Positions 28,201 through 58,345 of a DNA stretch of 64,000 bases are shown here, piece after piece (positions within the stretch are counted from its first letter, which is position 1; every line of letters starts with the position of its first letter). A model generated the notes under the pieces. That model was given only the letters and a program-made list of their open reading frames with translations, searched no databases and had not been told where the DNA came from. The stretch lies in the NCBI RefSeq assembly GCF_006345805.1, contig NC_043007.1:67456001-67520000 (forward strand), in the 5' to 3' direction. A program made the translations under genes and the position numbers. Source of the stretch: Octopus sinensis (Eukaryota).

Positions 28201-28259
28201 CACGTCTTTGTATTATACATTGATTAAATTAAAAGAACCTTCTTCATTAGCTAACTTAC

Positions 28260-29892: not shown

Positions 29893-29917
29893 CTTATAAC
29901 TTAACATTATGTACTTT

Positions 29918-32118: not shown

Positions 32119-32164
32119 ACAGGGGGACTTTTATCATTCTTCAGTTCAGGATGTGAAGTAACAG
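32119..32164 (-). CDS. MDM1: MDM1 46-nt exon (SVTSHPELKNDKSPPV)
   Basis: Acceptor ttttattttacag, donor GT|gtgagt; phase 1->2. Confidence 0.78.
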
Positions 32165-32990: not shown

Positions 32991-33015
32991 ATTCAAGACT
33001 TTTGGCTCTTTTCAT
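32991..33015 (-). CDS. MDM1: MDM1 25-nt microexon (MKRAKSLE)
   Basis: Acceptor ttttttatctttacag, donor T|gtaaga; phase 0->1; needed with the next exon to restore frame. Confidence 0.75.
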
Positions 33016-34468: not shown

Positions 34469-34897
34469 CTTATGTTTTGGCTCAGTTTTGTCACTGTCTT
34501 CAGTTCTTCTTGATGATGTTGGTCCACTGGTTTCTAATTTTGTTGACAAACTTTCTGTAGTCTTAACAGGTCGTGAGGATGTCTTTTTTTTTATGTCTTT
34601 TTCTTTATTCTTAACAGGTTGTGAGGATGTCTTTTTGCTGGGGCATACATCTTCAGTTGACTCTGATTTTGCCAATGCACCTATCCTTTCAGTTCTCTTA
34701 GAACTCACTGACTTGCTTCTACGTGGATGTTTTATTTTTTTCACAGAGGAATATTCATTTTCTACTGTAGATGCAGTAGAGCAGACATTTTTCTCAGATT
34801 GCGGGCTGCAAAAGTTCCTCTGATACTCTGACATTTTTACTACATAATCATTTTGAGAAGGGGCTTGAGTAAAATGGTTGCCTAAGTGAAAAAGGTT
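34469..34897 (-). CDS. MDM1: MDM1 exon with SEYxxxF repeat (NLFHLGNHF...KMSEYQRNFCSP...EPKHK) and internal KKTSS(Q/R)PVK duplication
   Basis: Acceptor ttttttcattcag, donor AAG|gttggt; 429 nt, phase 0->0. Confidence 0.9.
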
Positions 34898-37425: not shown

Positions 37426-37557
37426 CTTAGGTTTTTGTACCAAAGAATCTGTTTTCAAAGGTTTCTTCGCTGTGAAGTTTTTCTGATATTCTGAAGACCT
37501 TATTGCAGAACTTCTAGGCGGACCTAAGCCAGATCTATAGAGCAATCCAAGTAATTT
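37426..37557 (-). CDS. MDM1: MDM1 exon with SEYxxxF repeat (KLLGLLYRSGLGPPRSSAIRSSEYQKNF...)
   Basis: Acceptor ttccccacaccag, donor AAG|gtaact; 132 nt; S-E-Y-x3-F microtubule-binding motif. Confidence 0.9.
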
Positions 37558-39291: not shown

Positions 39292-39520
39292 GGTCATATG
39301 ACATAGTGGTTAAGAGCACAGGCTACTAACCCCAAGATTCCGAGTTCGATTCCAGGCAGTGACCTGAATAATAACAATAATATCAGAAAAATAACTTAAG
39401 AATGAGAACCCAGGTTCAAAATTCCCCCAGGACACCTGATGAAGGTAGGAGAGTACATCAGCCAAAACGTTAACAACAAACAAGATCAGGACAAATATCT
39501 GTCAAATGTAAATAACATAA
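39292..39520 (+). mobile_element. tRNA-headed element with decayed hammerhead motif in its tail
   Basis: Acceptor stem GGTCA/TGACC, A box TGACATAGTGG (39299), B box GAGTTCGATTCC (39342), CTGATGA at 39436. Confidence 0.75.
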
Positions 39521-39531
39521 ATAATGGAAAC

Positions 39532-39708
39532 TAGAAAATAGTTGAAAAATCCACACCATATGTCAACAGATCAAAAGAATGTAAGCTATGCGTAACTGAA
39601 AGAACGCAAATCCTTTCCAGATCTAAGAACTCTACCACACTGCTGAATTCTAGATCCAAAATTTTCAGCAGTTGTAAACATATGGCTAAGTTCCTGTTGA
39701 CATATTGG
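39532..39708 (+). mobile_element. Penelope-like element ORF C-terminal fragment
   Basis: *KIVEKSTPY...C-K-L-C-x-x-E-R...LLN-x-R-S-x-I-x-S-x-C-K-H, resembling PLE GIY-YIG C-termini. Confidence 0.72.
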
Positions 39709-40194
39709 AAAGTACCACCCTCTACAAATTGAGCAGTTGCACTGTAGACTCTAGGCTACTATCTTTTCAGCCTCACATTTTATGGTCAAAGAAAAACAAC
39801 TCTAATCCACCCTCCTTTTGCTTCTTTCCTATCCACGAAATCCAATTAACCTATAATTCAACTGGATGTTAGTTTAACATGTATGCAAAGTTTCATCAAG
39901 ATTGGTTCACCAGTGTAAGCAGCAAGATGGTAACAGACAGATAGATAGACAGATTAGACAGACAGAAATTGCCATTTATGTATAACATTTTTATTTGTTT
40001 CAGTCGTTTAACTGCAGCCATTCTGGAGCACTGACTTGAAGGGTTTTAGTCAAACAAATCAACCCCAGGACTTATGTCTTAAGCCTAGTACCTATTTTAT
40101 TGGTCTCTTTGCCAAGCTGCTAAGTTATGGGGATGTAAGCACACCAACACTGGTTGTCAAGTGATGATGGCAGGACAAGCACAGACACAAAAAA

Positions 40195-40231
<37 letters not shown>

Positions 40232-40567
40232 CGACAAACTTCTTTCAGTTTCCATCTACTAAATCCACTAACAAGGTTTTGGTTAGCCTGAGGTTATAGT
40301 AGAAGACACTTGCCTAAGGTGCCACATGTACACATTCACACAAACAGTGGCAAATCAAACTCAGAAACAGATTTTTTTTTTTACTCAAGCAGCAGAAGTT
40401 TTATCACTGTATATGGCTTGAGCTGATGGCAATTGTTAATAACAACAGTGTCAACAGAGATAGAAGAGAACCAGAGCAAGAGTGTGATAAAAATGGGAAT
40501 ACTGGACGAGAATCAAGAGTGATGGGAGTAAGAAATATGAGGAGAGATTAAAAATAAGGTTACTAAC

Positions 40568-40660
40568 CTCCTGATTGTCTGAATGTTTTTTTGGTGAGGA
40601 ATTTTCTGATATCACAGATTTCTTGACTGGTGATTTCACTGAGTTTACTATTTGTTCAAC
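40568..40660 (-). CDS. MDM1: MDM1-like exon C2 (VEQIVNSVKSPVKKSVISENSSPKKHSDNQE)
   Basis: Acceptor tgtatttaag, donor GAG|gttagt; 93 nt, phase 0->0. Confidence 0.75.
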
Positions 40661-41707
40661 CTTAAATACATAAATATTAAATGAGTAACCCTTTTTGTTA
40701 CCATATTTCTTTCAACATACACTGTTGTTGTTACAATTAATTTGGAATTTAGTAATATAACTTTGTTGTTACTAAGCTGGTGTTTGGAACATAAATTAAT
40801 GTGAAATCTTGATTGAAGGTTTTAATTTAGATCAGTTTAAAACAAGACGTTTGTATTAAACCAGGATGGTCTTGTGTACGTCTGTATCAAAAGAGCTAAT
40901 CATGAATTTAAACATGGTAGGCTCACAGAAAAAATACTAAGTTTTAATCTTATGAATTTTAAGTTCTTAACAAGACAACATTCTGAAAAATGTACACATA
41001 ATCACGCACTCACACACAAAATGTTTTTACTGTTCTAATCATTCTACTGAATCAGAATCAAAAGAATATGTTTATCAAGTTATAGAAACTTTAGAATTGT
41101 CATTACACCATTTGTTATTATATTTCTGTTGAAATTCACTGCATTTGTTTCAGTTGATTTTGAAAATGATGAAGAATTTAGTAAAATATCTTTGGTGCAC
41201 TAGGGTCAATGTAATTGATTAGCACTTTTCACCAATATTGGTTGATGAGCCAAGTTCTGCAGCAGATAAACTTGGAGAAGAAAAGTCATCAAATTACTGC
41301 TTTTTGGCATTTTTTGAATGTTTATTCCTATGGAATTTATGCCTCTTGTTCTTGTCCATGTGGTCGATCCTTTTATTACTCCTAATGAAAGGTTTTGAGC
41401 ACTTTTTTATGTGTATTTTGTGACAGAAATGAAAAAAATGGAAGAAAACAATTTTCAAGTGTCTTCGCTGAGAATTGGATGTTGGATGTAAGGTGTGCTC
41501 TGATTAGTCGAGAGGCCTGCTACATCACAAAATGAGTGACATTTGCCCAAGGTGCCACACAGTGAGATTGAACCTGGAACCATGTGGTTGAGAAGCAAGC
41601 CATGCCTGCACCTATATACAAACATGGGATGGAAACAATAAAAAAATTATGTTTCTACAAACTTACATATTAATAAATAAATAAATAAATAAATAAAGTT
41701 TATTAAC

Positions 41708-41800
41708 CTCTTCGTTGTCTGAAAGGTTTTTTTGTGAGTAAGTTTCAAACATTACAGATTTCTTGACTGGTGATTTTTCTGGACACATTATCTCTTCACC
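41708..41800 (-). CDS. MDM1: MDM1-like exon C1 (GEEIMCPEKSPVKKSVMFETYSQKNLSDNEE)
   Basis: Acceptor tatatttaag, donor GAG|gttaat; 93 nt, phase 0->0; paralog of C2. Confidence 0.75.
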
Positions 41801-42109
41801 CTTAAATATATGAACATCAAATGATTGGTTGTGAGTTTAAACATGAGGGATTCACAGATTCACAGAAAAATTACTAACTTTACTGAGTGTACTAGATGTA
41901 TCTGATCACAGTACCAGCACTAGATAGATTGTCACAACCTCAAGAAAACTATATTTGCCAAGTATGTTACAGTATGTACAAGATGCATTTTATTGTGGCA
42001 CTGTCACAAGTGAGGTTACTGTGTATCCTGCAATACTAAAGAATCCATGCTACTTTGTGTTGTCTCTGTTCATTCAAGGCTAGTTGAGAGTAGTGGCATC
42101 TCAATGTCT

Positions 42110-42665
42110 TCTGCCCTTGTAATTTGAGACACATCTTGGATATCAAGAAGACTGACCACAACACCAACACTAGTCCTAAACTACACCAAGACACCCATTT
42201 CATTCACCTAGCTCCAGCAGTGCCATCTGGTCATGTAGATCGCATGCCAGATGGAAGGAGCCCAAAAGACCTCTTGTATGGGGAATTGGCCACTGGCACA
42301 AGAGCATGAAGATTACTTCATCTTCACTTCAAGGACATCTGCAAGAGAGATATGAAATCAATAGATCTGGACGTCCTGAGATGGGACGGGGTCGTAAATG
42401 ATCATCCACGCTGGAGACAAATACTGTGAAAGAAGATGAAGCGAGGGGAAGAGAAAGAGGAACTTGCCACCAAAGAAAAGCGCAGTTGACAAAAAGAAAA
42501 ACCAGTAGTGCCGGTAGAGAGCTGCTTCAAATGCAGTCGCTGTATGCATGACTGCCACCCCTGTTTGGGTCTCTACAGCCACAGGAGACTCTGCACCACC
42601 ATCAGCAGCTGACACAATTTCTTTGAGCACAGATCCATGGTCTCTTGAGACTCACTCACAGATGC
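42110..42665 (+). mobile_element. 3' fragment of an RTE (BovB-like) LINE
   Basis: GHVDRMPDGRSPKDLLYGEL..G, KDICKRDMK, and C-terminal C-x2-C...GLYSH...C; stops present. Confidence 0.85.
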
Positions 42666-42869
42666 CTACTCTTTCAAGGTAATATGACTAAGAGGGTGAA
42701 TAGGAGACAACACAATGACAGAAGATGAACTAGAGAAAGAAGAGAGCATGAGGTGCAAAAATAGGGTAAAGGTGGCGAACAAGGTTGCATTGCTCCCAAC
42801 AAGGCTAAGAATCCTTGCTATCTTACAGCATCTCCATTTGTCCAAGGTAACAGTGTTATTAGGAAACAG

Positions 42870-43337
42870 AGTGGCCGTTTGCCAGCTCTGTCTGGCAACC
42901 GTGTCGGTGGCACGTAAAAGCACCATCCGTTCGCGTCCGTTGCCAGCCTCGGCTGGCTCCCGTGCCGGTGACACGTAAAAGCACCGTCCGTTCGTGGCCG
43001 TTTGCCAGCTCTGTCTGGCCCCGTGTCGGTGGCACGTAAAAGCACCATCCGTTCGTGTCCGTTGCCAGCATCGCCTGGCCCCGTGCCGGTGACACGTAAA
43101 AGCACCATCCGTTCGTGGCCATTCGCCAGCTCTGTCTGGCACCTGTGCAGGTGGCACGTAAAAAACACCCACTACACTTGCGGAGTGGTTGGCGTTAGGA
43201 AGGGCATCCAGCCGTAGAAACACTGCCAGATCTGACTGGGCCTGACGAAGCCTTCCAGCTTCACAGACCCCAGTTGACCCGTCCAACCCATGCTAGCATG
43301 GAAAGCGGACGCTAAATGATGATGATGATGATGATGA
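42870..43337 (+). mobile_element. Short element with RTE-like 3' tail and (GAT)n end, with 5' array of ~61-bp monomers; copies 7073-7400(-), 8977-9200(-), 19556-19929(+), 23190-23468(+), 33757-33911(+)
   Basis: Shared gtggttggcgttaggaagggcatccagc(c/t)gtagaaac...ccaacccatgctagcatggaaagcggac..aa(t/c)gatgatgat. Confidence 0.85.
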
Positions 43338-43654
43338 TGAGAGTGAATGACAAAAGAATCAGAATGAGAGAGTAAAGAGAGCAAAAATAGGAAGGGGGAA
43401 ATTAGAGTAGGGAGGGGTAATGATTACCTTGTCAAACATAATACTTATTTATTCATATTGTTTTGAATCAATCAAGCGTTATCTCATAACTTCAAGATTT
43501 CAATGATGTGATTGTTTATTTTTAGAATAATATTGTAGAGTTGCTGTGAGAGGCCCAATCTGATCATTTTGAACATAAAACAGGTGGGATATTCAGGCCA
43601 GGTGTGGCTGGTTTGAATACTAAAGGATTAATAATGATGTAAATTTAATTACGT

Positions 43655-43950
43655 GGAGGTGCAATGGCCCAGTGGTTAAGGCAGCAGACTTGTGGTCGGA
43701 GAATCGTAGTTTCGATTCCCAAACCGGGCGTTGTGTGTGTTTATTGAGCGAAAACACCTACAGCTCCACAAGGCTCCGGCAGGGGGTGGTGGCGACCCCT
43801 GTTGTACTCTTTTGCCCCAACTTTCTCTCACTCTTTCTTTCTGTTTCTTGCGTAACGCTGCAATGGACTGGTATCCCATCCAGCTGGGGGGAACACATAC
43901 GCCACAGAAACCGGGAAACTGGGCCCATGAGCTTGGCTAGGCTTGAAAAG
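43655..43950 (+). mobile_element. tRNA-derived SINE family B; copies 2065-2349(-), 22311-22610(-); related heads at 11762-11880(+), 17413-17745(-)
   Basis: Head tggcccagtggttaag (A box) ... gtttcgattcc (B box); shared body gaaacaccta-agctccac; tail aggcttgaaaag. Confidence 0.85.
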
Positions 43951-44502
43951 GGTGAAAAGAAAAAAAAGAAGAAATTTAATTACGATGATGATGATGTACA
44001 GAAATACTGCTATCAATGAAATGGAATTGTAAATGAGTTGGTGGCATGAAAAATACATCCAGTACATGTTGTAAAGTTGTTCACATTAGGAAAGGACGTC
44101 AGCTATAAAAACTGTGCCAAAGCAGACACTAGAACACAATGTAGTGCTTGAACCTACCAAACTGTCTTAACCATGTAAAGCATGGAAGATCGACATTAAA
44201 CAGTGATGCTAATGATGAAATGGAATGCAAGGTATCTGCTCTCAATTCTTCGAAAAGAAAGCGTAACAAAGTTAAAGAAAGATGCAGGTATGACTGTGTG
44301 GCCAAAAAGTTTGCAAGTGTGCAGTTTCAGGTTAGATCCAACTGCACAGTACCTTAGATGTCTTCTACTGTAGCCTCAAGCTGATCAATACCTTGTGAGT
44401 GATTTGATAGAAAGAAACTAGACAAAACATGTAACATATATGCATACCTACATACATATATATATATGTGTGTGTGTGTGTGTATATACACACACACAAA
44501 TA

Positions 44503-44720
44503 AGGAGGTGCTGAAAAGTTCCTGGCTTTGGGTAAAAGAAAATACAGGAGAATCAGTTAATTATGATTTTATTCAACATATTCCCCTTTTTGGTCCACAC
44601 ACTTATTGCAGCATTCCTTCAGCTTTTCTAAACCCTGAAAAAAAAACCTTGGAAGGTTGGACCTCCAACCAGGCCTTTTGCAATACCCTTAAAGCCAGGA
44701 ATTTTTCAGCATCCCCTCAT
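44503..44720. mobile_element. ~218-bp mariner-type MITE
   Basis: TIR aggaggtgctgaaaagttcctggcttt / aaagccaggaatttttcagcatcccct, flanked by TA. Confidence 0.82.
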
Positions 44721-45188
44721 TATTACCTACACATACACACTCACACATATCATCACCATCATTTTTACATCCACTTTTCCATGCTTTCATGGGTTATATA
44801 GAATTTTGTTGAGGCAAGATTTTCTATGGCCATATGCCCTTTCTTTCAGCAACCTTCACCTGTTTTCAAGTAAGGAAATATGTTCCCATAACCAGACAGA
44901 AGACTCAGGACAAAAGGCACCACTTCCATGATGGTAACATTTGTTTACAATTATCAAGCAATGTTAAGACAAGGAGACAATAATTATAATCTCCACACAC
45001 ACAATGGAATGTAGATGTACTATCAGTATATCAAATGAATCTTTCAGCATATATTATACAATTTATCTCACTGTTTCAGTATGTATTATGTGTAAGTTTG
45101 CTATTTCAGCTAGTTCGTTTCTGCACCTGGAAGGAAGTAGAGACAGACACCAAATAATTTTAATAGAAAAGCATCATATAAATAATAC

Positions 45189-45311
45189 CTTTTCATTTGA
45201 TTTCAAATTGTCCAACATTATAGCCTTAGACGATTTTGCAAATTTGCTTGTATCAACAACAGGAGCTGGTTTTAGATCCTTTGTAGCAGGATATTGGTCT
45301 TCATTTTTGTC
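45189..45311 (-). CDS. MDM1: MDM1-like exon D (DKNEDQYPATKDLKPAPVV...LKSNEK)
   Basis: Acceptor gcattttttttag, donor AAG|gtatta; 123 nt open, phase 0->0. Confidence 0.75.
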
Positions 45312-46075: not shown

Positions 46076-46270
46076 AAAATCACGTTCGATTTCAGCACTT
46101 TTGCTCAGCATATTGTTCATTCTTTTCCTTTGTTTGTAGACAACATTTTCAGAAAACTTTGCATGATTTCCAAGAAGTATATATTCTTCCTGATCAGGTA
46201 CTGCCCCTCCATAGGAATGTACAGGAACTGTTCTATTTGTATGATTTTTTTCAATGTTTTCCACTTGCAT
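46076..46270 (-). CDS. MDM1: MDM1-like exon A3 (MQVENIEKNH...EEYILLGNHAKFSENVVYKQRKR...ERDF)
   Basis: Acceptor tttttctcag, donor TTT|gtaagt; 195 nt, phase 0->0. Confidence 0.82.
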
Positions 46271-47959
46271 CTGAGAAAAAAATTATAAAACCAGAAGAAT
46301 AGACATAAACAATTGTTAATAAATCACTCGTTCTAAATCAGAGACATTAATCAATCATAGACTATAAGTCAATGAGTGAGATATACACTGCCAGTATGTT
46401 CTTTCCTAATGTAAGATACTTAGGTGAAATATAAGGGAAAATTAGCTGCTGCTTGTAATAGACTGAATTACAATTGTTTGTACAGAGAGTGGATATGAGT
46501 TACTTACAGCAGATGTGATAGACAGGGGGTCAAAAGGCTAACAAGGTTTAAATAGACACATACATTACAAATGTGTGTGTGTGTATGATGGGATTCCTTC
46601 AGTTTCCATCAAACAAATCTTGTCACAGGACTGTTTTTAAAATCATTATTGTTAAAAATAGCATTATTAATGATGTACTGAGGGCAGTGAATTGTCAGAA
46701 TCATTAAATTATTGATAAGAATGCTTTGTGGTCTTTCTTTTGACACTTTATGTTTCTGGTTCAAATCCCACCAAGTTCAACTTGTTCTTTCATATTTTCA
46801 GGGTTGATAAAATAAAGTACCAGTCAAGTACTGGGGTTGATGGTATCAATTAATCCTCTTCTCTCCATCTGCCTAAATTAGAAACCATTAATACTGATGT
46901 TATTCATTAACTGAATTAGTTGAATTATTTCACTTCATGATAGAGCTTTGATATGGTCCCTCGTTGTGTTAGAAATTGCAACCAAATCTCCTTATAATTA
47001 TATCCTATTCTTTCAAACAACAAAAATATCTTAGATGGTCTGATTCAATCACACACTCCTGTATTAAACAACACTAACACGAATGGAAGTAATAACACAA
47101 AACAGAAAAAGAATTCAACAACACGAACATGTAGTTTTGTGTGAGTGTTTTGTAAAATCAGGAAGTGAAAAAAGAAGTGAATAGAAGTGACATTTTTATA
47201 GAGTTAAAGATGTAGTCAGGAAGTAGACATGACAGTGAATAACAATTATTGCTTGATTTAACTGAAAAGAGATAATAGTCATGTTGAAACTTTCAAAACA
47301 GATCATAAAAATTATATTTTTATGAAAATATATCCAGACTAGAATTAAGATTGTACAAATCATTTCAAACTGAATAAAAAGGTTATATAAATATATATAT
47401 ATAGTTCAAATTTACAGAAAACAAAAGACAAAGACAGATGAAGGAACAACAAGCAGGTGCATTAGTTTGACGCTTGGGAAGAATGGGTAAGTCTTTGATG
47501 TTTCAAGCCTATGCTCTTCAACAGAAAGGATTGAGAGGGAAAAAAAGGAGAGAAAACACAAAACAACAGAGAAAGAAAAAAATGTGTAGGGATTAAAGGT
47601 TCAACATGATGAAATAGCTGGAAGAAAGAGGCTGAATGAAAGGGAGATAGTAACATGTCATCCTGGCCAAACTAGCGTGTGCAAGCACATGCATGTATAT
47701 GGAAAGGGTGTGTGAATGTGTATGAATATATGTGTGAGTGAACTTAAAATTATGTAGGCCTGTATGTGGCTATATATCTTTAAATTGTTTCAGCTCCAAA
47801 GCTGCAGTCATGCTGGGGCACCACTGTTTATATATATATATATATCAATTGCTGCCTTCTTCATTATAATTAAAATATAAATAACACCACACTTTTGGTG
47901 AACTGTTTTAACCAAAAACCTGATATATTACTGCTAAGAAGTATGTATTGATCACTTAC

Positions 47960-48013
47960 ATGTGGATCACAGGAATCTTCCTCTGTGTGTTTCTCGATGT
48001 CATCATTTTCATT
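47960..48013 (-). CDS. MDM1: MDM1-like exon B2 (NENDDIEKHTEEDSCDPH)
   Basis: Acceptor ttttgaaattag, donor CAT|gtaagt; 54 nt, phase 0->0. Confidence 0.8.
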
Positions 48014-48133
48014 CTAATTTCAAAATAAACGCAACATTTAGCATTCCTACTCAGTATACATAAATACATAATCATGCTGACACAAACAACCTAGACAGAG
48101 AGTACTTTAAGTGAGAGAATGAAAACAATTATA

Positions 48134-49411
48134 TTGGGTCTTCCCATAAATAATGTGATTTTTTAAATTGCACGAACTAAAAGCTGGAGGGGGCGGGATA
48201 AACTACTTGCATCAACTTGCTATAAAAGCAGGTAGTAATTTTCCCTTGTACTTATTCTTAGTGCAAGTTTTGAAGAGTGCAGTTCGATTTTAACAGTTAT
48301 TTTTTTCAAAGCTATAATGGAAGTGACAAAGGAGCATATTTGGCACATTTTGCTTTATGAGTTCAATAAAAGCAACAATGCAATGGAAAGTGCAAGGAAT
48401 ATTAATGCAGTATATGGGGATCAGACAATAAGCATAAGTCAGTGTCAATGATGGTTCCAGAAATTCTGAACCAGAAACTACATCCTAGAAGACGAGCCTT
48501 GTCCTGGAAGATCTGTAGAGCTTGACAAGGACATCCTGCAAACCCTGGTAGAACAAATCCTATTGTAACTGTTGAAGAACTAGCAGAGAAACTTGGATTT
48601 GGTCATTCAACCATTCATCGACACCTGCGTGCCATTGGAAAAGTCAATAAATTAGGTCAATGGGTTCTGCACAAACTTTCTGAGTCTAATCATGTGCAGA
48701 GAGTGAATGTGTGCTCTTCTTTACTGTCACATCTCATGAATGAACTTTGTTTTTGGACCGAATAGTGACAGGTGATGAGAAATGGGTTCTCTCTAAAAAT
48801 GTCAAATGCCAAAGACAGTGGGTAGGGAAAGGAGAAACACCAGACTAAAGAAGGTCTTCACCTATGTAAAGTGTTGTTATCTATTTGGTAGGATATGAAA
48901 GGTTTAGTCCACTTTGGACTTTTAAACCCAAACCAAACGATAACAAAGGAGATCTACTGCGAGCAATTTGAGCAGCTTGAGTCAGCACTAAAAGAAAGAT
49001 GACCATCTTTGATTTCAAGACAAAAGGCGTTCTACCATCAGGATAATACTCAACCACATACAGCAAGGATGACATTCTAAAGGCTGGAGCAGTTTGAATG
49101 GGATACGATGCCCCGCCCACCATATTCGCTGGACATTGCCCCATCTGATTATCATTTATTCCACAGTCTTCAAAATCATTTGAATGGAAAAAATATGAAT
49201 TCTGTAGATGAGGTCAGAACAGAACTGGAGGAGTATTTTTCATCATGGACAAATGAATTTTGGAAGAGGGATCTTGCAAGTCTACCAGATAGATGGAAGA
49301 GCATTGTAGAAAATGAAGGAGAGTATATTTTAGATTAAAAAAGAACTTTGTTTATCTTAATTCTAAAAAATAAAATTTTTAAAAAATTGCATTCTTTATG
49401 GGAAGATCCAA
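48134..49411 (+). mobile_element. Full-length but decayed mariner (D,D34D) transposon, ~1.28 kb
   Basis: TIRs ttgggtcttcccataaa / tttatgggaagatccaa with TA on both sides; transposase ATG 48317 to stop 49338 with TGDEKW, HQDN, YSLDIAPSDYHLF; stops and frameshifts. Confidence 0.93.
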
Positions 49412-50213
49412 TAGATATTCAGAGAACTATTAACTCCAAGGTGACAACAATATAGATGTTCACATAATTGTGAATTCTTTTTATAAGATTGGAGCTTTCC
49501 AGGCTATTAATCTCATCTTTAGAGTCTATAATACTTTCACCTCCCTTAGTCCTTAGTTCAGTGGGTCTTGTCTTATGAGTTACTAGGTGACACTACTAAT
49601 GCTGGTGCCATAAAAAAAATTCCCTGTTCACTCTGTAAAGTGGTTGGCATTAGCAAGGGTGCCCAGTCATAGAAATCATGCCAAAGCAGAAGTGGAGCTT
49701 AGTGCAGTCCTGTGGTTAATTGGATCCTGTTTAACCATCCAATCCACACCAGTATGGAATATGCATGTTAAATAATGGTAGTGATGATGATGACGATGAT
49801 GACAATATTTATAGAAACCATGCAGTCTGGCAGCTTATCTGATCCTTTCAAATCACCCAATCCATGCCAGCATATGAAATACACATTAGATGAGGACAAT
49901 GATGAATATTTTGAATACTAATCACCACCAAATGTCTAAATTTTTGGATGTATACATGTCTCAAACTGGATTCAAGTTTGGAACCTTTAATTTTGAACAT
50001 CTACATATTCCAGTGGCCTAGTAGAATGAGTGTAGAGGTTAGTATGAGGCTTGGAAGAGGCGTTCTTGATTCAACTGTCACCTCCTAGCCAAAGGAGAGA
50101 AGGTGATATTTCAGTCAGGACTACTACTGTAGTGATATTAGGAAAAGTTAGAGTGGAAACAGTATGTTTTTTGGTTAGAAGATGAAAGGTAATGATAAAT
50201 GACTTTATGTTAA

Positions 50214-50490
50214 TCAATTAGGTGGCCAATTGTCCAGAGGGTGAGCTGATTCGTGATGTCCTCCTCCTACCTCCATTTCCCAACTGGCACAAATGCACGG
50301 GCAGGCAGCTGAAGACCTGGGCAACGACGATAAACGAGGACCTCTCCAAACTCTCAGGTCTGCAGGTGGTCGGTCTGCGCAGATGGAACCGCGAATGGCT
50401 CGCGATCTCCAGTGACCTCGCACAGGACTGTCGGGCGTGGGCCGCCATGGTTCATGATGCCATCAGGACCAGAGAAGAAGCTGGCTCAAC
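50214..50490 (+). mobile_element. 3' fragment of a second RTE-clade LINE
   Basis: ELIRD-x-LL-x-P...GRQLKTW...RRWN-x-EW...LAQD-x-x-AW-x-A-x-x-x-D pattern. Confidence 0.75.
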
Positions 50491-51057
50491 GCCATCACAC
50501 CCCCACAAAAAAATTAGATGGCAGTTTTGGGGTGTGGTCAAGAATGTTTGTACATGTATCAGCAACACCATCCTAGATGTAGGAGTCATACTCCATTGTG
50601 GGTCTTACCTGAGCTTTGTAAAGGATTTCTAGTTTTTTGTTCAAGTAGAGGAAGGCCAGTCTTTCTCATGAATGTTTTTTCTATCTTGAAGATATGCGTT
50701 TGTCACAAGATACTCAGTGAGGGTGAAACTTAGCATTAAGTGACCTTGAGAGATTTTCATGCTTGTTGTTCATGTAAAAGATACTAATGTCTAATCTAAT
50801 ATAGAATAGCTTAATACCAAGAATTGTTGATCTTTCAAGTAATCTATATTACTTCTAGATACATCAGTGTCAACCTCCCAGTTATGTCTTTTATAGAGAG
50901 TATAATTCTAAGGATAGACTAAATTAAATATTGCTCAGTGACTAAATTAAGAACTCATGACATGGAAAGAAAGATTATGACCAACCAATAAGGTGAACAT
51001 GTTACTTAAAGGAACCCAGCAGTTTCCTAAACAGTTCTTGTTTCTTTCAACACTTAC

Positions 51058-51237
51058 TAAATCATGTTCAGTTTCAGCACTTTTGCTCGGCATATTGTTC
51101 ATTCTTTTCTTTTGTTTGTAGATAATATTATCAGAAAACTTTGCATGATTTCCAAGAAGTATATATTCTTCCTCATCAGGTGGTACACCTCCACAGGAAT
51201 CAGCAGGAACTGTTCCATTTGTATGATCGTTTTCAAT
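51058..51237 (-). CDS. MDM1: MDM1-like exon A2 (IENDHTNGTV...EEYILLGNHAKFSDNIIYKQKKR...EHDL)
   Basis: Acceptor tttttgctcag, donor TTA|gtaagt; 180 nt, phase 0->0. Confidence 0.82.
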
Positions 51238-52691
51238 CTGAGCAAAAAAAAATTAAAACCAAAATAGTTCAGATATTAAATCATTCACTGTAAATCAGAG
51301 ACATTAATCAATCACTGTTAATCAGTCAATGAGATTAGCTCGGTTCTTCATTTCCATATTATGATTCTGTTATGATATAAGACACAAGCATTAAGTGTCC
51401 CAAGGTGAAGATAAACTTGGAATATTACTAGTGTATTATATTGAACACTGCTTCAATTCTAAGAGAGAATACACACACACACACATGTATGTTTTTATGT
51501 ACAGTTATATCTAAAAACAGTTGCCATTCTTGTCACTAAACCTTGTCTGTTTTTTCAAATAAGGAATCCTTTGCTTTACATGTCTTCCAAGGTGTGAAAT
51601 AAACAGATAATCAGTTGACAACAATACTGTTTGGAGTGAGCAACTTTTGTAGAGTGCAAAAATAAACAAACACACAGACAAGCACAGGAGCACACACACA
51701 TACATATGTGTGTGTGTGTGTGTAAAACAGGCTTCTTTTAGTTTCCATTTACCAAATTCGCTCATATGGTTTCAGCTGTCCTGAGGTTAAAGTAGAAGAC
51801 ACTGTATAGGTGCAGGAGTGGCTGTGTGGTAAGTAGCTTGCTTACCAACTACACGGTTCTGGTTTAGTCCCAATGCATGGCACCTTCGGCAAGTGTCTTC
51901 TACTATAGCCTCGGGCCAACCAAAGCCTTGTGACTGGATTTGGTAGATGGAAACTGAAAGAAGCACGTCATTTATATGTATATGTATATATATATGTATG
52001 CGAGTGTGTGTTTGTCCCCCCAACATCGCTATGTTCCCGTAACTTAGCGGTTCAGCAAAAGAGACCGATAGAATAAGTACTAGGCTTACAAAGAATAAGT
52101 CCTGGGGTCGATTTGCTCGACTAAAGGCGGTGCTCCAGCATGGCCACAGTCAAATGACTGAAACAAGTAAAAGAGAGTAAAAGAAAAAGAGTGGAAGTGA
52201 ACCATAAACTATGTGGTTGAGAAGCACGATTCTTAAACACACAGACATCAGTATTATGCAGCAAATAGTTACATCATCAATACATAGAAATGACATTTCA
52301 ACATTAAAACATCTTCAGGTAGACTCTGAACTGGTGATGTCATAATTCTCTAGGTCAAGGGGGAAAAGAAAGAATCCAAGAACACATGTTATTGAAATAC
52401 TACATTCATTTGGTCATTCAGCTTCTACTACAGCAATAGTTGGTTATCTATATATTTCTGTCTTGATGTTGACGCAATCTTTGTCCTTCATATGGCATGC
52501 ACAAGAGAAAATAAATGAGTTTATTTTCCTTTTTAGATGACATGCACAGGCAGGAAATAAAAACTAGAAAGGCTTACCAAATGTTTGACATTATCAGAGT
52601 TTAGATAATAATGCCAACACACCCTTGGGTGGTAAATGGTATTAACTGAGAACCTGATATTGCTTCCAAGAAGTATGTACTCGTCACTTAC

Positions 52692-52745
52692 ATGTGGATC
52701 ACAGGAGTCTTCTTCTGAATGAATCTGGTTATCATCATTTTCTTT
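52692..52745 (-). CDS. MDM1: MDM1-like exon B1 (KENDDNQIHSEEDSCDPH)
   Basis: Acceptor ttttttaattag, donor CAT|gtaagt; 54 nt, phase 0->0; paralog of the exon at 47960-48013. Confidence 0.8.
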
Positions 52746-54349
52746 CTAATTAAAAAAACAAAAACAAAAACAAAGCAGCATTTAGAAGTCACAATTAAAA
52801 TATATATAATTACAAAGTTTTTTCTTACAAAAAAAGCATAGTTAATAATTAATTAATTCTGGGAATAGTTATAGCAAGGGTATGAAAACAACATAAAAGT
52901 TCATAAAATTATTAATTTTGTTTAACCCTTCCACATTCACATTGTTCTATCAAAAGCATTGCTTATTTATTCACATTGTTTTGAATTAATCTTGCATTAT
53001 TTTGTAGCTTTGAAATTTTGATGAGGTCGGGCATGGCTGTGTGGTTAGGGAGCTTGCTTCCTAGCTATATGGTTTCGGGTTCAGTCCCACTGCGTGGCAC
53101 TTTGGGCAGGTGTCTTCTACTATAGCCCCGAGTCGACCGAAGCTTTGTGATTGAATTCGGTAGATGGAAGTTACTGCCGTGTGTGTATATGTACGTGTAG
53201 GTGCTCAGTGCCTCTCCGAAAGAGAGAGAGGGGGAAGGTAACTGTTAATTCTTAGAATGATATTGTAGAGTAAGTGTGAGAGGCCAGATCTGGCCTGCTT
53301 GAACATAAAACAAGTAGAATATTTTTGCCAGATATGGCCAGTTTAAATGCTAAAGAGTTAAACACCTAAAAATTTCAAATGAGTTCTTAATAAGACTAGA
53401 ATTTACCATATTACTAATCCTATCTTTAGATTCTATATTTACAGCACTTATATCTACACTACATTTTTCATAACCATCATTATAATAATAATAATAATAA
53501 TAATGAAATTATTGTATACAGTGCTCAGGTGCACCACAACATGTCAGAAAGTGCATATAAAGTATATGCAGTAATGTACAAATGTCTGGAAAGCGAACAA
53601 TGTATGAATCAGATACATGCTTGTGTGTGTATGGAGGGGAGAAAATCAGGTGTAGTGTTGGCGAATCTCTGGAAGTTTGGAAGGATGCAGTGCTCCGTCA
53701 ACTAACAATCGATGCCGGCAGTTTGTTCCATGCTTCAGCAACCTTCAGTGTCTGATGCCTCATCTGTTTTGACATTCGTACATGTACCAGAGACAATTCA
53801 AACTAGGAACTTTTATTTCTGAACTTCTCGGCATTGATATGACTGTGTTTCAAACGTTTGCTTCCAAAGCAAACAATAGAGTTCAGTCCCCCTGCTCGGC
53901 ATCTTTGGCAAGTAAGTGTCTTCTACTATAGCCCCAGGCTGACATAAGTGATCCTTTACATTAAAAACGCTAAGAGTTAGCAATAGGGAGGGCATCAAGC
54001 TGTAAAACAATGTCTCAACAACATATTTGGTTAACCCATGCAAGCATGGAAAAACAGACATAAAAACAAATGAAGAATACATAGTTTTACTTACATTTTA
54101 CGTAACTAATATTGAATAAATAAATGTACAAAAATTTTAAAACAAGCAATACCTTTTATATATATATATATATAATAAATATTAGGGAATAAATCCAAAT
54201 TTACAGGGAAAAAATCAGATTTAGGATTAAATCTAATTTTATAGTAAAATATTATAAAATATTATTAGAGACAAAACCACTATTTTGCAAAACAAACAAG
54301 GAAAGACTTAATCAATACATAAAATTTTAATAAATAGTCAAAAAAACCG

Positions 54350-54392
54350 CCACTACAATTGTTTCTTGTCTTGATCGACAATCTTCAGGTGG
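54350..54392 (-). ncRNA. Type-I hammerhead ribozyme motif, identical inverted copy
   Basis: Exact reverse complement of 57638-57680. Confidence 0.72.
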
Positions 54393-57300
54393 ACTTCCAA
54401 TCTAAAATATCAATATTTTAAAATATAAAAATAATAATTTTAAAATAATTAAAGTATGAATGAAAAAATATAAATATATAATCCATATATAACCTATATA
54501 TAATCCATATATAATCAATATATAAACAATATATAAACTAAAATAAACCCATCAACAATTAAATATAAAATATAAAATATAAAACAAAACAAAAAAATAA
54601 TAATAATATAATAATAAACTATATATACACCCATACACATATACCTAATTATATATAACCATATCTAACTACATACACTAAATCACACACCTATATATAT
54701 ATCCCTATACATACACATAAAAACGTCTAGGCAACTATAAATAAATAAAATAGCTAAATACTTCAACACAATACTTATTCATACTCCCACACACACACAC
54801 ATACAACCCACATTCACGCTCTAGAAAACAGACATCACTTAAAATTATGAACGGAGAAATGGAATAAATGGAATTAAAAATTATATTCACTTGGTAAAAC
54901 GAACACTACTTAAAAATTATGAATGAAACAATGCAATAAAACAACAGACATCGCAAATAGACACAAAATTACTACGAATTCCTTAACAAACCTACCATGA
55001 TAAACCAAAACTCATAAAAACATATAATGATAAAATCTCCCTTTACTAAACTCTATAACATACCTATATAGCAATCCCCCTAACCTAAACATTCACACAC
55101 AAATACACACACGTAAACCACACACCCACGACATATAGTTGCACATATCGAGCCCAACTAGCATGCATATGTACATGTGAGGGGGTACACGTACATGCCG
55201 TGCGCGTGTACCCCCTGCATTTATACCCGTGCGTGAATATACACATGGAGAGTACCACACAGGTACAAATGTGTATAGTAATGGGAGCCCCATCACTACA
55301 CTCAATGTATAATCTCACCCATCCGCACGGATGTGAAAGTGAATCTCCGGTGTATATGTTGAGGCTTATATGTAGCGCTGTGGAGGTGAACGTCGTTGAA
55401 ATTGTGAATGAATGGGTGGAGCTGGGAATTGTAACCGGGTGGTGGGCTAGCGTTGCTTGGAATTGGGAATGGAATAGTGTAGTAGTAAGGCAGGCATCGA
55501 GAATAGATTTGGGTTATTGCAAGTTGTTTGTTAGAGCTGCTAAGATGAGCTAAAGCTCAATTGTATATAATAATTTATTATGGTAGTTTTATTAAAGAAT
55601 CCATTCATAATAAATTTTTTTTAAGTAGTGTTGGTTTGCCACGTGGATATAGTTTTTAGTTCCATTTATTCTATTTCTCCATTCATAATTTTAAATGACG
55701 TTTACTTTCCATGGCGCGTATTCTTTTTTTACATAAGTTATATTTCTATGGTAACGTAATTTTGGTTTGATTTTTTTAACGGCTAAGAATTTAATTTCAC
55801 TTCATAATTGAAAGACTTGTAAGTATGTATTTTATTTCTCCTTATGTCATATTGTTATTTTTGATATTCTGGTTAATTACGATGTATTTAATGTGTTTTT
55901 TATTGGAGTGTTTATGTATATGAGATTGTGTGTGAGTTTTTAGTTGTATAATTTATTTATCTGTATGAGTGTGGGTGTGTAAATATTGTTGTATATATCG
56001 AGTTTAGTGAGTATGTATATGCGTATATGTGAGGGAGTATATGTATCTGTTGTGTGTGTGTGTTTTGCGTGTGTGTGTGTTTGTGTGTGAATGTGTATAT
56101 GGGTTTGTTATTTAGGTTTTGGGATGTATGTGTTAATTTGTTGTGTGTGGGGAGGGAGTGGGTTTTTGGTGTATATTGAGGCTTATAAGTTAGTATAGGT
56201 ATGTGTATAAGTCGTGGGTCTGTGGTTTACGTGTGTGTTTTTTGTGTGTGAATGTTTAGGTTAGGGGGATTGCTATATAGGTTTGTTATAGAGTTTAGCA
56301 AAGGGAGATTTTATCGTTATATGTTTTTAAGAGTTTTGGTTTATCATGGTTTTTTTAGGGAATTCGTGGTAATTTGTCTATTTTCGATGTTGGTTGTTTT
56401 ATTACATTGTTTCATTCATAATTTTTGAGTGGTGTTCGTTTTGCCACGTGAATATTATTTTTAATTCCATTTATTCCATTTCTCCATTCATTATTTTAAA
56501 AGATGTTCGTTTCCAGAGTGGTTATACTTTTTATACATATGTTAAGTTCCTTGGTAAAGTAATTTTGTTTGGTGTATATGTTGAGGCGTATATGTACTTG
56601 TGGGTGTGTGTGAGTGGGGTGGGTGTTTGTATTTGTTATGGGTGTGTGGTTTACGTGTGTGTTTGTGTGTGAATGTATAGGTTAAAGGGATTGCTATATA
56701 AGTATGTTATAGTGTTTAGTAAAGGGAGGTTTTATCATTTATGTTTTGTGAGTTTTAGCTTATCATGGTAGTTTTATAAAAGAATCCATTCATAATTTTT
56801 TTGTGTTTATTTGTCTGTGTGGGGTTGAGTGGGTTTTTGGAGTATATGTTGAGGTTTATATGTATGTATAGGTATGTGTAAGTGGTGTGGGTATTTGTAT
56901 ATGTCGTGGGTGTGTGGTTTACGTGTGTGTATTTGTGTGTGAATGTTTAGGTTAGGGGGATTGCTATATAGGTATGTTATAGAGTTTAGTAAAGGGAGAT
57001 TTTATCATTATATGTTTTTATGAGTTTTGGTTTATCATGGTAGGTTTGTTAAGAATTCGTAGTAATTTGTGTCTATTTGCGATGTCTGTTGTTTTATTGC
57101 ATTGTTTCATTCATAATTTTAAGTAGTGTTCGTTTTACCAAGTGAATATAATTTTTAATTCCATTTATTCCATTTCTCCGTTCATAATTTTAAGTGATGT
57201 CCGTTTTCTAGAGCGTGAATGTGGGTTGTATGTGTGTGTATGTGGGAGTATGAATAAGTATTGTGTTGAAGTATTTAGCTATTTTATTTATTTATAGTTG

Positions 57301-57637
57301 CCTAGACGTTTTATGTGTATGTATAGGGATATATATATAGGTGTGTGATTTGTGTATGTAGTTAGATATGGTTATATATAATTAGGTATATGTGTATGGG
57401 TGTATATATAGTTTATTATATTATTATTATTTTTTGTTTTGTTTTATATTTTATATTTTATATTTTATATTAATTGTTGATAGGTTTATTTTAATTTATA
57501 TATGTTTATATATTGATTATATATGGATTATATATAGGTTATATATGGATTATATATTTATATTTTTCATTCATACTTTAATTATTTTAAAATTATTATT
57601 TTTATATTTTAAAATATTGATATTTTAGATTGGAAGT

Positions 57638-57680
57638 CCACCTGAAGATTGTCGATCAAGACAAGAAACAATTGTAGTGG
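57638..57680 (+). ncRNA. Type-I hammerhead ribozyme motif
   Basis: CCAC-CTGAAGA-TTGTC(gatcaa)GACAA-GAAAC-aatt-GTA-GTGG. Confidence 0.72.
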
Positions 57681-58163
57681 CGGTTTTTTTGACTATTTAT
57701 TAAAATTTTATGTATCGATTAAGTCTTTCCTTGTTTGTTTTGCAAAATAGTGGTTTTGTCTCTAATAATATTTTCTGCTGTACTCTTTCACCACTCTAAA
57801 AGGCGGTGCTCCAGCATGGCCGCAGTCAAATGACTGAAACAAGTACAAAAAAAAAATATATATATTTTAATAATATATAATTATTAATATTAGGAAATCA
57901 ATATCAAAACTCCCCAGAAAGATATACACGTGTGAAAAATAATTGTTGTATTAAAAATATATAAATAAATAAATATAAATATGTATAAAAATATATGTAA
58001 ATATGTATAAGTATAAATATATAATGTATATGACAGTTTAAAAGTTTTGAATTAATTATTTGAAGCATCTTACGATCGTTTCACAGAAGATTTGTCCCTA
58101 TAATGTAAATATAAATTCAGTATATAATATTCTCATTGAATATATTTAACTAAAGATTTATAC

Positions 58164-58345
58164 CTTTTTTATATTGAAATATCTTTTTGGTTTATAACAG
58201 ATATTTCCTTCAAACTTGTCATTTCTTCCCAGCAGCATATAATCCGCATTTGAGTCATGTTCTTTTACTGAAAAGTCACTTGATAAACAAGTAACAGGAC
58301 CTTCACGTCTCTTCTTTCTTTGTAGACATGGTTCAAACAACACAC
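58164..58345 (-). CDS. MDM1: MDM1-like exon A1 (GVLFEPCLQRKKR...ADYMLLGRNDKFEGNICYKPKRYFNIKK), most 5' exon found
   Basis: Acceptor tttttag|GT, donor AAG|gtataa; 182 nt, phase 1->0; G-x-x-x-EP-x-x-x-x-K-K/R-R matches the MDM1 N-terminal GITKEPSFISKRR segment as recalled. Confidence 0.75.

What the first reader, a model, noticed from the sequence alone, without database searches (positions are those of the whole stretch)
46076..58345. MDM1 N-terminal region built from a duplicated two-exon module encoding a new repeat
Exon order on the - strand is A1, B1, A2, B2, A3. B1 and B2 are both 54 nt and end in EEDSCDPH|gtaagt. A2 and A3 are highly similar, and similarity runs into the flanking introns. 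All three A exons share Y-[IM]-LLG-x3-KF-x2-N-[IV]-x-YK-x-[KR]-[KR]. B also aligns without gaps to the start of A2 (NENDDIEKHTEEDSC vs IENDHTNGTVPADSC), so five exons may descend from one unit. I do not recognise this repeat from vertebrate MDM1. It may be a lineage-specific extra tubulin-binding or spacing module in a centriolar/ciliary lumen protein (inference).
Basis: partly seen in the sequence, partly recalled or inferred. Interest (0 to 1): 0.72.

Follow-up and report, generated by a model that had tools for sequence, protein, structure and literature searches.

The report
Repeated N-terminal exons of octopus MDM1
The front of an octopus centriole-protein gene (MDM1) is built from five tandem copies of one exon, but the motif they carry is an old one shared by molluscs, an annelid, a nemertean and a brachiopod, which cephalopods multiplied from one copy to three.

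Summary
Five paralogous exon-like units (A1, B1, A2, B2, A3) lie in order on the minus strand at 58345-46076. All have AG acceptors and GT donors, and B1 to A3 are phase 0-0.

The gene is MDM1 (Pfam PF15501, E=6.6e-23). It is colinear with the Octopus bimaculoides MDM1 locus at 89.5% intron identity. The RefSeq models there splice A1-B1-A2-A3 into MDM1. B2 is in no model, and its orthologous place is an assembly gap.

The repeat is not new as a motif. [DE][YF]xLLGxxxKFxxN[VI]xY occurs once, about 30 residues after EPxLQxKKR, in MDM1 of bivalves, gastropods, a chiton, an annelid, a nemertean and a brachiopod. It was not found in the deuterostome MDM1 sequences examined. The sampled cephalopods (Octopus, Argonauta, two cephalopod-like transcripts) have three copies and lack the first (S/T)EYxxxF repeat.

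B exons are truncated A-type exons. The rest of the unit continues in frame behind their GTAAGT donor. It is intact and ultraconserved after B1 and frameshifted after B2.

The region is predicted disordered (pLDDT 40). A role as a multivalent binding motif is inference only. This is a new variant of a known gene, of modest interest.

The parts
58164..58345 (-). Exon A1 (182 nt, phase 1 start). It encodes (G)VLFEPCLQRKKRREGPVTCLSSDF...DYMLLGRNDKFEGNICYKPKRYFNIKK and is the orthologue of the ancestral MDM1 exon that carries EPxLQxKKR plus the LLG-KF motif.
   Evidence: It is used in the O. bimaculoides model at the orthologous place, at 95% nt identity. It matches residues 47-105 of oyster MDM1.
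52692..52745 (-). Exon B1 (54 nt, phase 0-0), KENDDNQIHSEEDSCDPH|gtaagt. It is the acidic head of a truncated A-type unit.
   Evidence: It is used in the O. bimaculoides models, as 17 aa because of a one-codon deletion.
52578..52691 (-). B1 extension: the remainder of the ancestral A-type exon, behind the B1 donor. It stays open in frame (VSDEYILLGSNIRFSVNTIYHPRVCWHYYLNSDNVKHL) up to the ancestral-type donor TTG|gtaagc. It is either an intron or an alternative 5' splice-site extension.
   Evidence: It is 113/114 nt identical to O. bimaculoides, inside a 126-nt perfect run, the second longest among about 39.5 kb of aligned columns. For the motif block, dN/dS against A1, A2 and A3 is 0.19-0.37.
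51058..51237 (-). Exon A2 (180 nt, phase 0-0), IENDHTNGTVPADSCGGVPPDEEEYILLGNHAKFSDNIIYKQKKRMNNMPSKSAETEHDL.
   Evidence: It is used in the O. bimaculoides model, at 96% nt identity.
47960..48013 (-). Exon-like unit B2 (54 nt, phase 0-0), NENDDIEKHTEEDSCDPH|gtaagt. Its expression is unverified, and its polypyrimidine tract is weaker than that of B1.
   Evidence: It is not in any O. bimaculoides isoform or in the Argonauta protein. Its orthologous place is an 883-N gap. B1/B2 dN/dS is 0.14 on only 18 codons.
47863..47959 (-). Decayed remainder of the A-type unit behind the B2 donor (DQYILLSSNI, then a 2-nt insertion and frameshift; the motif glycine is lost).
46076..46270 (-). Exon A3 (195 nt, phase 0-0), MQVENIEKNHTNRTVPVHSYGGAVPDQEEYILLGNHAKFSENVVYKQRKRMNNMLSKSAEIERDF.
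   Evidence: It is used in the O. bimaculoides model, at 96% nt identity.
51021..51057 (-). Conserved intronic block directly after the A2 donor. It has a paralogous copy after A3 at 46039-46075. A 24-nt block upstream of both exons (51291-51314 and 46334-46357) is identical. These are candidate splicing-control elements or marks of gene conversion.
   Evidence: An 87-nt perfect run with O. bimaculoides spans 51088-51001.
19291..45311 (-). Rest of the MDM1 coding exons, with boundaries approximate where taken from tblastn:
- 45311..45189 (DKNEDQYPATKDLKPAPVVDTSKF...)
- 41800..41708 (alternative in O. bimaculoides)
- 40660..40568
- 37557..37426 (SEYQKNF)
- 34897..34469 (SEYQRNF)
- about 32186..32118
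- 31454..31365 (SEYQKNF)
- 29477..29253
- 27179..26571
- 26479..26414
- 23878..23717
- 22029..21877
- 19410..19291 (...RTRKRMNFW, then stop)
   Evidence: Pfam PF15501 scores 81.9 bits against a cut-off of 27.
54158..58159 (.). A 4.0-kb insertion with inverted terminal arms of about 0.9 kb (97.5% identical), placed in the intron 5 bases after the A1 donor. It is flanked by the 9-bp duplication AAAAGGTAT and is absent from O. bimaculoides. It is not part of the repeat, but it explains the long A1-B1 distance.

Best explanation
Shown:
- The interval is the 5' third of an Octopus MDM1 gene on the - strand. Coding exon 1 lies about 0.8 kb beyond the window end.
- It holds a tandem array of five paralogous copies of one exon type.
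- A1 is the orthologue of the ancestral MDM1 exon, which in spiralian animals encodes EPxLQxKKR...[DE][YF]xLLGxxxKFxxN[VI]xY once.
- The sampled cephalopods have two further expressed copies of the motif-bearing part (A2, A3), giving three motifs. They lack the N-terminal (S/T)EYxxxF repeat 1.
- B1 and B2 are further copies cut short by an internal GTAAGT donor, so only their 18-residue acidic head is coded. After B1 the rest of the unit is intact and unusually conserved. After B2 it is frameshifted.
- In the closest annotated relative the mRNA is exon1-A1-B1-A2-A3-..., without B2.

Inferred history:
- Repeated tandem exon duplication took place, most simply a duplication of a B-A pair.
- Later homogenisation of A2 and A3 by gene conversion would explain why they are 88% identical with identical intron flanks, while B1 and B2 are only 74-81% identical and the introns between them no longer align.

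Inferred mechanism (probability about 0.3):
- The segment is an intrinsically disordered stretch of the microtubule-binding N-terminal half of MDM1.
- The LLG-KF motif would be a short linear binding motif whose multiplication raises valency. It may offset the lost (S/T)EYxxxF repeat 1.
For: - Gene identity: Pfam MDM1 E=6.6e-23, profile positions 167-380; three SEY motifs. The locus is colinear with O. bimaculoides CM046611.1 (LOC106870839, named Nuclear protein MDM1 by UniRef) at 89.5% intron and 93.7% exon identity.
An 873-aa ORF with three motifs sits on a 2956-nt Logan transcript contig, and a related 2940-nt contig carries the same N-terminal region. Both have an in-frame stop before the ATG.
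- Ancestry of the motif: single copy in 14 named non-cephalopod spiralian MDM1s in the unit listing (plus Batillaria with Ile for Leu), three copies only in cephalopods. A1 groups with unit 1 of other cephalopods and with oyster.
- Coding constraint between old paralogues: motif-block dN/dS 0.13-0.37 with saturated dS.
- B as a truncated A unit.
- B1 extension conservation.
- Disorder: AlphaFold2 mean pLDDT 39.9.
- N-terminal half binds microtubules in human MDM1: PMC4626064.
Against: - No transcript data exist for the species of the window, so exon use rests on a relative about 10% diverged.
- Between the two Octopus species the A/B exons show weak protein-level constraint (pN/pS 0.71). That equals the rest of MDM1 (0.70) and is not evidence of special function.
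- A2 vs A3 has dN/dS 1.5, based on 3 synonymous and 18 non-synonymous differences.
- Introns inside the two supposed B-A modules do not align, so one-step module duplication is not proven.
- Unit-to-unit scores do not resolve how B relates to units 2 and 3 of the other cephalopods.
- No binding partner is known for the motif, and it has no profile similarity to the SEY/Mn repeat.
Confidence: 0.8

Rival explanations
1. One reading: B2 is a regular coding exon, so the protein reads A1-B1-A2-B2-A3. Its absence from relatives' models is then an artefact of the assembly gap.
For: - B2 has an intact 18-codon frame, an AG acceptor and a perfect GTAAGT donor, and is phase 0-0.
- B1/B2 dN/dS is 0.14.
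- The orthologous place in O. bimaculoides is 883 Ns, so a model could not contain it.
Against: - Both O. bimaculoides isoforms join A2 directly to A3.
- The Argonauta protein has no B-like segment between units 2 and 3.
- B2's polypyrimidine tract is weaker than that of B1.
- The dN/dS figure rests on 10 differences.
Confidence: 0.3
2. A2 and A3 are similar because they arose by a recent duplication within the Octopus lineage, independently of the two extra units in Argonauta and the other cephalopods. On this reading no gene conversion of old copies is needed.
For: - A2 and A3 score higher with each other (168) than with any Argonauta unit (93-119).
- dS between them is only 0.09, and the similarity includes the intron flanks.
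Against: - All four cephalopod or cephalopod-like proteins show the same three-motif layout.
- The A2/A3 split predates the divergence from O. bimaculoides, because each copy has its own orthologue.
- Outside about 350 bp nothing in the introns aligns. A duplication only 12% diverged should still align there, whereas a short conversion tract fits.
Confidence: 0.3
3. The LLG-KF unit is a diverged Mn/SEY-type (or SNYG-type) microtubule-inner-surface repeat. Cephalopods would then have replaced one Mn repeat by two more of a related kind.
For: - There is a superficial likeness: xEYxxxG against (S/T)EYxxxF.
- SNYG motifs are described as Mn-like units with an invariant glycine (PMC10973386).
- MDM1 is listed there as an Mn-repeat protein.
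Against: - A profile-profile comparison of 33 LLG units with 56 SEY units gives probability 0.6% and no aligned stretch.
- Pfam finds nothing in the cephalopod N-terminus.
Confidence: 0.08
4. The units are not MDM1 exons but chance ORFs, fragments of a transposable element or exons of a separate upstream gene.
For: - The window is rich in SINE-like and other repeats, and chance ORFs of 100 codons occur in it.
- The first protein search with the A/B peptide found nothing.
Against: - There are only five copies, all in one orientation and in one intron-exon series.
- The same residues occur inside annotated or assembled MDM1 proteins of four cephalopod-type sources and, as one copy, in many other spiralians.
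- Splice sites and phases are conserved.
Confidence: 0.02

Closest known systems
Octopus bimaculoides LOC106870839 (XP_052827740.1 / XP_052827741.1; UniRef 'Nuclear protein MDM1' A0A0L8HG92)
   Same: - It is the orthologous locus and colinear: 89.5% intron identity and about 85% protein identity.
- It has the same exon series, exon1-A1-B1-A2-A3-...
- It has the same open, identical B1 extension.
   Different: - B1 is one codon shorter.
- It has no 4-kb insertion after A1.
- The B2 place is an assembly gap.
- NCBI names it only 'uncharacterized protein'.
- The older UniProt models start at the Met of A3.
MDM1 of non-cephalopod spiralians, e.g. Saccostrea echinata XP_061187580.1, Pecten maximus XP_033745457.1, Liolophura sinensis XP_064605054.1, Owenia fusiformis CAH1782606.1, Lingula anatina XP_013380841.1
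   Same: - The EPxLQxKKR...[DE][YF]xL[LI]GxxxKFxx[NS][VI]xY segment is the same as in A1.
- The later PAPVxDTSKF block, the three downstream SEY repeats and the C-terminal ...RxKxFW end are also shared.
   Different: - They have one LLG-KF unit, not three.
- Most of them keep the N-terminal MPVxFKGxSEYxxxF repeat 1, which the sampled cephalopods lack.
Vertebrate MDM1 (Van de Mark et al. 2015, PMC4626064)
   Same: - It is a microtubule-binding centriole protein with (S/T)EYxxxF repeats.
- The window's three repeats map to Pfam positions 167-380, the region of the second to fourth human repeats by position; repeat 2 starts at residue 189.
- EPSFISKRR corresponds to EPCLQRKKR of A1.
   Different: It has no LLG-KF motif at all, four SEY repeats and no exon array.
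Mn / SNYG microtubule-inner-protein repeats (Andersen et al. 2024, PMC10973386)
   Same: These are short repeated motifs in disordered, lumen-facing microtubule proteins, and MDM1 is counted among Mn-repeat proteins.
   Different: The LLG-KF unit has no detectable profile similarity to the SEY/Mn units.
Tandem exon duplication in general (from established knowledge: symmetric exons duplicated in place, often alternatively or mutually exclusively spliced)
   Same: - The paralogous exons are adjacent and have the same phase.
- A second pair in the same gene (41800..41708 and 40660..40568) has one alternatively included member in O. bimaculoides.
   Different: - A2 and A3 are both included in the available models, so they are additive rather than mutually exclusive.
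- The B copies have been shortened by a new donor.

Membership tests
MDM1 (Pfam PF15501) | Profile match above Pfam's gathering score | tested here: met
   The downstream exons score 81.9 bits against a cut-off of 27, E=6.6e-23, profile positions 167-380. The A/B peptide alone gives no match.
MDM1 (Pfam PF15501) | At least two (S/T)EYxxx(F/Y) repeats (PMC4626064) | tested here: met
   There are three: SEYQKNF at 37494-37474, SEYQRNF at 34831-34811 and SEYQKNF at 31445-31425. Repeat 1 is absent from the window, from 10 kb upstream in O. bimaculoides and from two cephalopod-type mRNAs.
MDM1 (Pfam PF15501) | Orthology with an annotated MDM1 locus | tested here: met
   The window is colinear with the O. 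bimaculoides LOC106870839 locus over window positions 64000-8023.
MDM1 (Pfam PF15501) | A1, B1, A2, B2 and A3 are spliced into the same mRNA as the SEY exons | tested here: inconclusive
   This holds for A1, B1, A2 and A3 in the orthologous RefSeq models and for three-motif transcripts of other cephalopod-type samples. B2 is in none. No transcript data exist for this species.
MDM1 (Pfam PF15501) | Microtubule binding and centriole localisation | not testable with these tools
   Known only for the human protein (PMC4626064).
Spiralian MDM1 LLG-KF unit (defined here) | [DE][YF]xL[LI]GxxxKFxx[NS][VI]xY with invariant L, G and Y | tested here: met
   A1, A2, A3 and the B1 extension all fit (B1 has R for K). 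In the 33-unit alignment L10, G12 and Y23 are invariant. B2 has lost the G and the frame.
Mn / SEY microtubule-inner repeat | Profile similarity to (S/T)EYxxx(F/Y) units | tested here: not met
   hhalign probability is 0.6% with one aligned column.
Mutually exclusive tandem exons | Only one of the paralogous exons is present per transcript | tested here: not met
   A2 and A3 are both present in XP_052827740.1 and XP_052827741.1 and in the Argonauta protein.

The most novel reading that the evidence does not exclude
The LLG-KF unit is an undescribed, spiralian-wide binding motif of the centriole and cilium lumen protein MDM1. The sampled cephalopods rebuilt the N-terminus by dropping the first Mn-type repeat and tripling this motif. 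Copy number may also be tuned by splicing: the ultraconserved, still open B1 extension would add a fourth motif through an alternative 5' splice site, and B2 would act as a cassette exon.
Probability: 0.2. Interest if true: 0.55.

Novelty: new variant of a known kind. Interest (0 to 1): 0.35.

Why it matters
MDM1 is a little-studied microtubule-binding protein of the centriole lumen, and only its (S/T)EYxxxF repeats have been described. Three things come out of this locus.

- Spiralian MDM1 proteins carry a second, strongly conserved N-terminal motif that the deuterostome MDM1 sequences examined (vertebrate, amphioxus, echinoderm, hemichordate) lack.
- The sampled cephalopods tripled that motif by tandem exon duplication while losing the first SEY repeat.
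- The locus records how duplicated exons are trimmed by new splice donors and kept similar, possibly by gene conversion.

If the motif binds tubulin or a lumen partner, it gives a natural copy-number series (0, 1, 3) for testing valency in microtubule inner proteins. Otherwise this is an ordinary case of exon duplication in a fast-evolving disordered region. The proteins themselves are already in public databases.

Tried and rejected
- The word-indexed protein search with the A/B peptide found nothing. With the MDM1 core it found only one genomic Logan fragment, and with the cephalopod N-terminal alignment only P0005. That index evidently lacks the relevant proteins. The exhaustive search found them.
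- Pfam on the A/B peptide gave no MDM1 match, only sub-threshold noise.
- A possible sixth copy at 46478-46395 (E=0.002) is full of stops in the neighbouring frames and has no motif, so I treat it as chance.
- 'ATGAAGGAT TAA' 35 nt upstream of A1 mimics the true start, MKD. It is present in O. bimaculoides too, but the flanks show no homology to real exon 1 (alignment score 19-20 against a shuffle mean of 18.9), so it is a coincidence.
- I tried to equate the B units with unit 2 of the other cephalopod-type transcripts. Shared H-x-S-D-[QE]-Y residues suggested it, but pairwise scores do not support it, so it stays unresolved.
- The LLG unit as a diverged Mn/SEY repeat was rejected by hhalign.
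- A structure prediction gave pLDDT 39.9. The weak two-strand hint at YILL/IIYK is below any usable confidence, so no fold search was run.
- A literature search for the SRA runs and for MDM1 in cephalopods found nothing. The species of P0004 and P0005 therefore stay unknown.


Full report
**Observation**

- A1 58345..58164
- B1 52745..52692
- A2 51237..51058
- B2 48013..47960
- A3 46270..46076

B1 and B2 are both 54 nt and end EEDSCDPH|gtaagt. A1, A2 and A3 share Y[IM]LLGxxxKFxxN[IV]xYKx[KR][KR]. Each unit has a polypyrimidine tract with an AG acceptor and a GT donor. B1 to A3 are multiples of three and phase 0-0. A1 starts in phase 1.

tblastn of the unit peptides against the whole window finds only these five places.
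- A2/A3: E=3.5e-27
- B1/B2: E=1.9e-13
- B1/A2: E=8.4e-6
- A1/A2: E=1.8e-4

A2/A3 DNA similarity covers 353 bp at 79% and includes the intron flanks. A 24-nt block upstream of both exons is identical, and 35 of the first 37 intron bases after the donor match.

**An addition to the observation: B is a truncated A unit**

The sequence behind the B1 donor continues in frame as VSDEYILLGSNIRFSVNTIYHPRVCWHYYLNSDNVKHL, up to a second donor, TTG|gtaagc, at 52578. B1 is therefore a complete 168-nt A-type unit in which an internal CAT|GTAAGT is now the annotated donor.

Behind B2 the same sequence has lost the motif glycine and carries a 2-nt insertion that shifts the frame. B1/B2 DNA similarity (167 bp, 74%) spans almost exactly this ancestral unit.

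**Which gene**

Exons further down the same strand encode three (S/T)EYxxxF motifs and the ELREKAAQYRQRALDSHF block. Together they match Pfam MDM1 at 81.9 bits, profile positions 167-380.

An exhaustive profile-free search with the spliced conceptual protein returned 75 proteins. The best is O. bimaculoides XP_052827741.1, at 85% identity, which UniRef names Nuclear protein MDM1. I fetched its locus (CM046611.1). It is colinear with the window over positions 64000-8023, with 89.5% identity in introns and 93.7% in exons.

The RefSeq protein maps onto the window as A1, B1, A2 and A3, then 45311..45189, an alternative exon at 41800..41708, 40660..40568, then the SEY exons down to the stop at 19291. 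Coding exon 1 (MKDTSQVQ, phase 1) lies at a position equivalent to about 0.8 kb beyond the window end. The window is therefore from an Octopus species about 10% diverged from O. bimaculoides, and four of the five units are model-supported MDM1 exons.

B2 is in neither isoform. Its orthologous place in that assembly is a run of 883 Ns, so this says little. The Argonauta hians protein also has no B-like segment between its second and third units.

**Is the repeat new?**

No, not as a unit. In the retrieved MDM1 proteins the motif [DE][YF]xL[LI]GxxxKFxx[NS][VI]xY occurs once, about 30 residues after EPxLQxKKR. It is found in:
- bivalves (Saccostrea, Pecten, Solemya, Potamilus)
- gastropods (Haliotis, Patella, Elysia, Nucella, Pomacea, Batillaria, Lymnaea)
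- a chiton (Liolophura)
- an annelid (Owenia)
- a nemertean (Lineus)
- a brachiopod (Lingula)

In a 33-unit alignment L, G and Y are invariant. Vertebrate, amphioxus, echinoderm and hemichordate MDM1 keep EPxF/LxxKKR but have no LLG-KF motif.

A1 carries both halves and groups with unit 1 of other cephalopods and with oyster, so it is the ancestral exon.

Three copies occur only in O. bimaculoides, Argonauta and two unidentified Logan transcript assemblies. Those two rank next after the octopods and share the MKDxxQV-type start. All four lack the N-terminal MPVxFKGxSEYxxxF repeat 1. In the two transcripts an in-frame stop precedes the ATG. No such exon is found in the window or within 10 kb upstream in O. 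bimaculoides.

The real lineage-specific change is therefore a remodelled N-terminus shared by all sampled cephalopods: one Mn-type repeat lost and two LLG-KF units gained.

**Selection**

Between the old paralogues (A1, B1 extension, A2/A3) the 21-codon motif block has dN/dS 0.13-0.37 with saturated dS. The motif has therefore been held by protein-level selection, including in the part of B1 now annotated as intron.

Between the window and O. bimaculoides the A/B exons have pN/pS 0.71 and the rest of MDM1 has 0.70. The whole protein evolves fast and the array is not special in this respect.

A2 vs A3 shows dS 0.09 and dN 0.14, from 3 synonymous and 18 non-synonymous differences, none of them inside EEYILLGNHAKFS. 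B1 vs B2 shows dS about 0.95 and dN 0.13 on 18 codons.

The B1 extension lies in a 126-nt run of perfect identity with O. bimaculoides. That is the second longest run among about 39.5 kb of aligned columns. I cannot say whether this reflects occasional use of the downstream donor or a splicing element.

**History (inferred)**

However, the intron interiors do not align.

A2 and A3 are much more alike than B1 and B2. Each of A2 and A3 has its own orthologue in O. bimaculoides. They resemble each other more than any Argonauta unit. An old duplication followed by a short gene-conversion tract of about 350 bp between A2 and A3 fits best. Independent duplications remain possible.

**Function (inferred)**

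AlphaFold2 on a five-sequence alignment gives mean pLDDT 39.9, consistent with disorder. Human MDM1 binds microtubules through its N-terminal half, and sequences outside the SEY repeats contribute (PMC4626064). MDM1 has also been classed as an elongated Mn-repeat microtubule inner protein candidate (PMC10973386).

The LLG-KF unit shows no profile similarity to SEY units (hhalign probability 0.6%). My best guess, at about 0.3, is a short linear binding motif whose multiplication raises valency in the microtubule-binding region.

**Verdict**

It is wrong that the unit is new or confined to this lineage's MDM1. This is a cephalopod variant of a known gene, already present but undescribed in public protein sets. 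I found no paper on it.

Noticed in passing
window 54158-58159: A 4.0-kb insertion with inverted arms of about 0.9 kb (54256-55137 vs 57774-56898, 97.5% identical) and internal repeats with strong GC skew. It sits 5 bases after the A1 donor and is flanked by the 9-bp duplication AAAAGGTAT (58168-58160 and 54157-54149). It is absent from O. bimaculoides. It changes positions +5 and +6 of an already weak donor (GTATAA vs GTATTG).
   Followed up: partly
window 41708-41800 and 40568-40660 (- strand): A second pair of tandem paralogous 93-nt exons in the same gene (GEEIMCPEKSPVKKSVMFET... and VEQIVNSVKSPVKKSVISEN...; 77.6% over 134 nt including flanks). The first is the only difference between O. 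bimaculoides isoforms X1 and X2, so it is alternatively spliced there.
   Followed up: partly
window 52583-52709 (- strand): A 126-nt run of perfect identity with O. bimaculoides covers the end of B1 and the open 'intronic' continuation of the A-type unit. It is the second longest run in the aligned locus and is unexplained. It may be an alternative 5' splice site or a splicing element.
   Followed up: partly
beyond window end (>64000); L005 10001-10025: MDM1 coding exon 1 (ATGAAGGACACCAGCCAAGTGCAAG|gt) lies about 0.8 kb outside the window. The sampled cephalopod MDM1 genes have no exon for the first (S/T)EYxxxF repeat that most of the other MDM1 orthologues examined carry at residue 9.
   Followed up: yes
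L005 19871-20753 (O. bimaculoides CM046611.1): An assembly gap of 883 Ns lies exactly where the B2 orthologue should be, so the public gene models cannot show whether B2 exists or is used in that species.
   Followed up: yes
window 48239-49335 (+ strand): Broken open reading frames that look like a mariner/Tc1-type transposase lie in the A2-B2 intron. This is my reading of the translations; no family search was run. The region is shared with O. bimaculoides at 88% identity, so the insertion is old.
   Followed up: no
window 9585-9808 (+ strand): The longest perfect-identity run with O. bimaculoides (223 nt) overlaps an ORF ending ...DRFDDPKGKMFSVPVME. In O. bimaculoides the neighbouring gene there has Pfam VAS1_LD / Ac45-VOA1_TM hits, so this is probably the last exon of an ATP6AP1-like gene convergent with MDM1.
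   Followed up: no
window 45637-46034, 51803-52185, 35101-35583, 36288-36635 and many more: A SINE-like repeat family (peptide-like reads such as ...LFQSFDCGHAGA...SKLTPGLI...) is scattered through the MDM1 introns. One copy abuts the conserved block after A3 and marks where A2/A3 similarity ends.
   Followed up: no
window 58372-58380 (- strand): ATGAAGGAT followed by TAA, 35 nt upstream of the A1 acceptor, mimics the true MKD start and misled tblastn. It is present in both species, but its flanks are not homologous to exon 1.
   Followed up: yes
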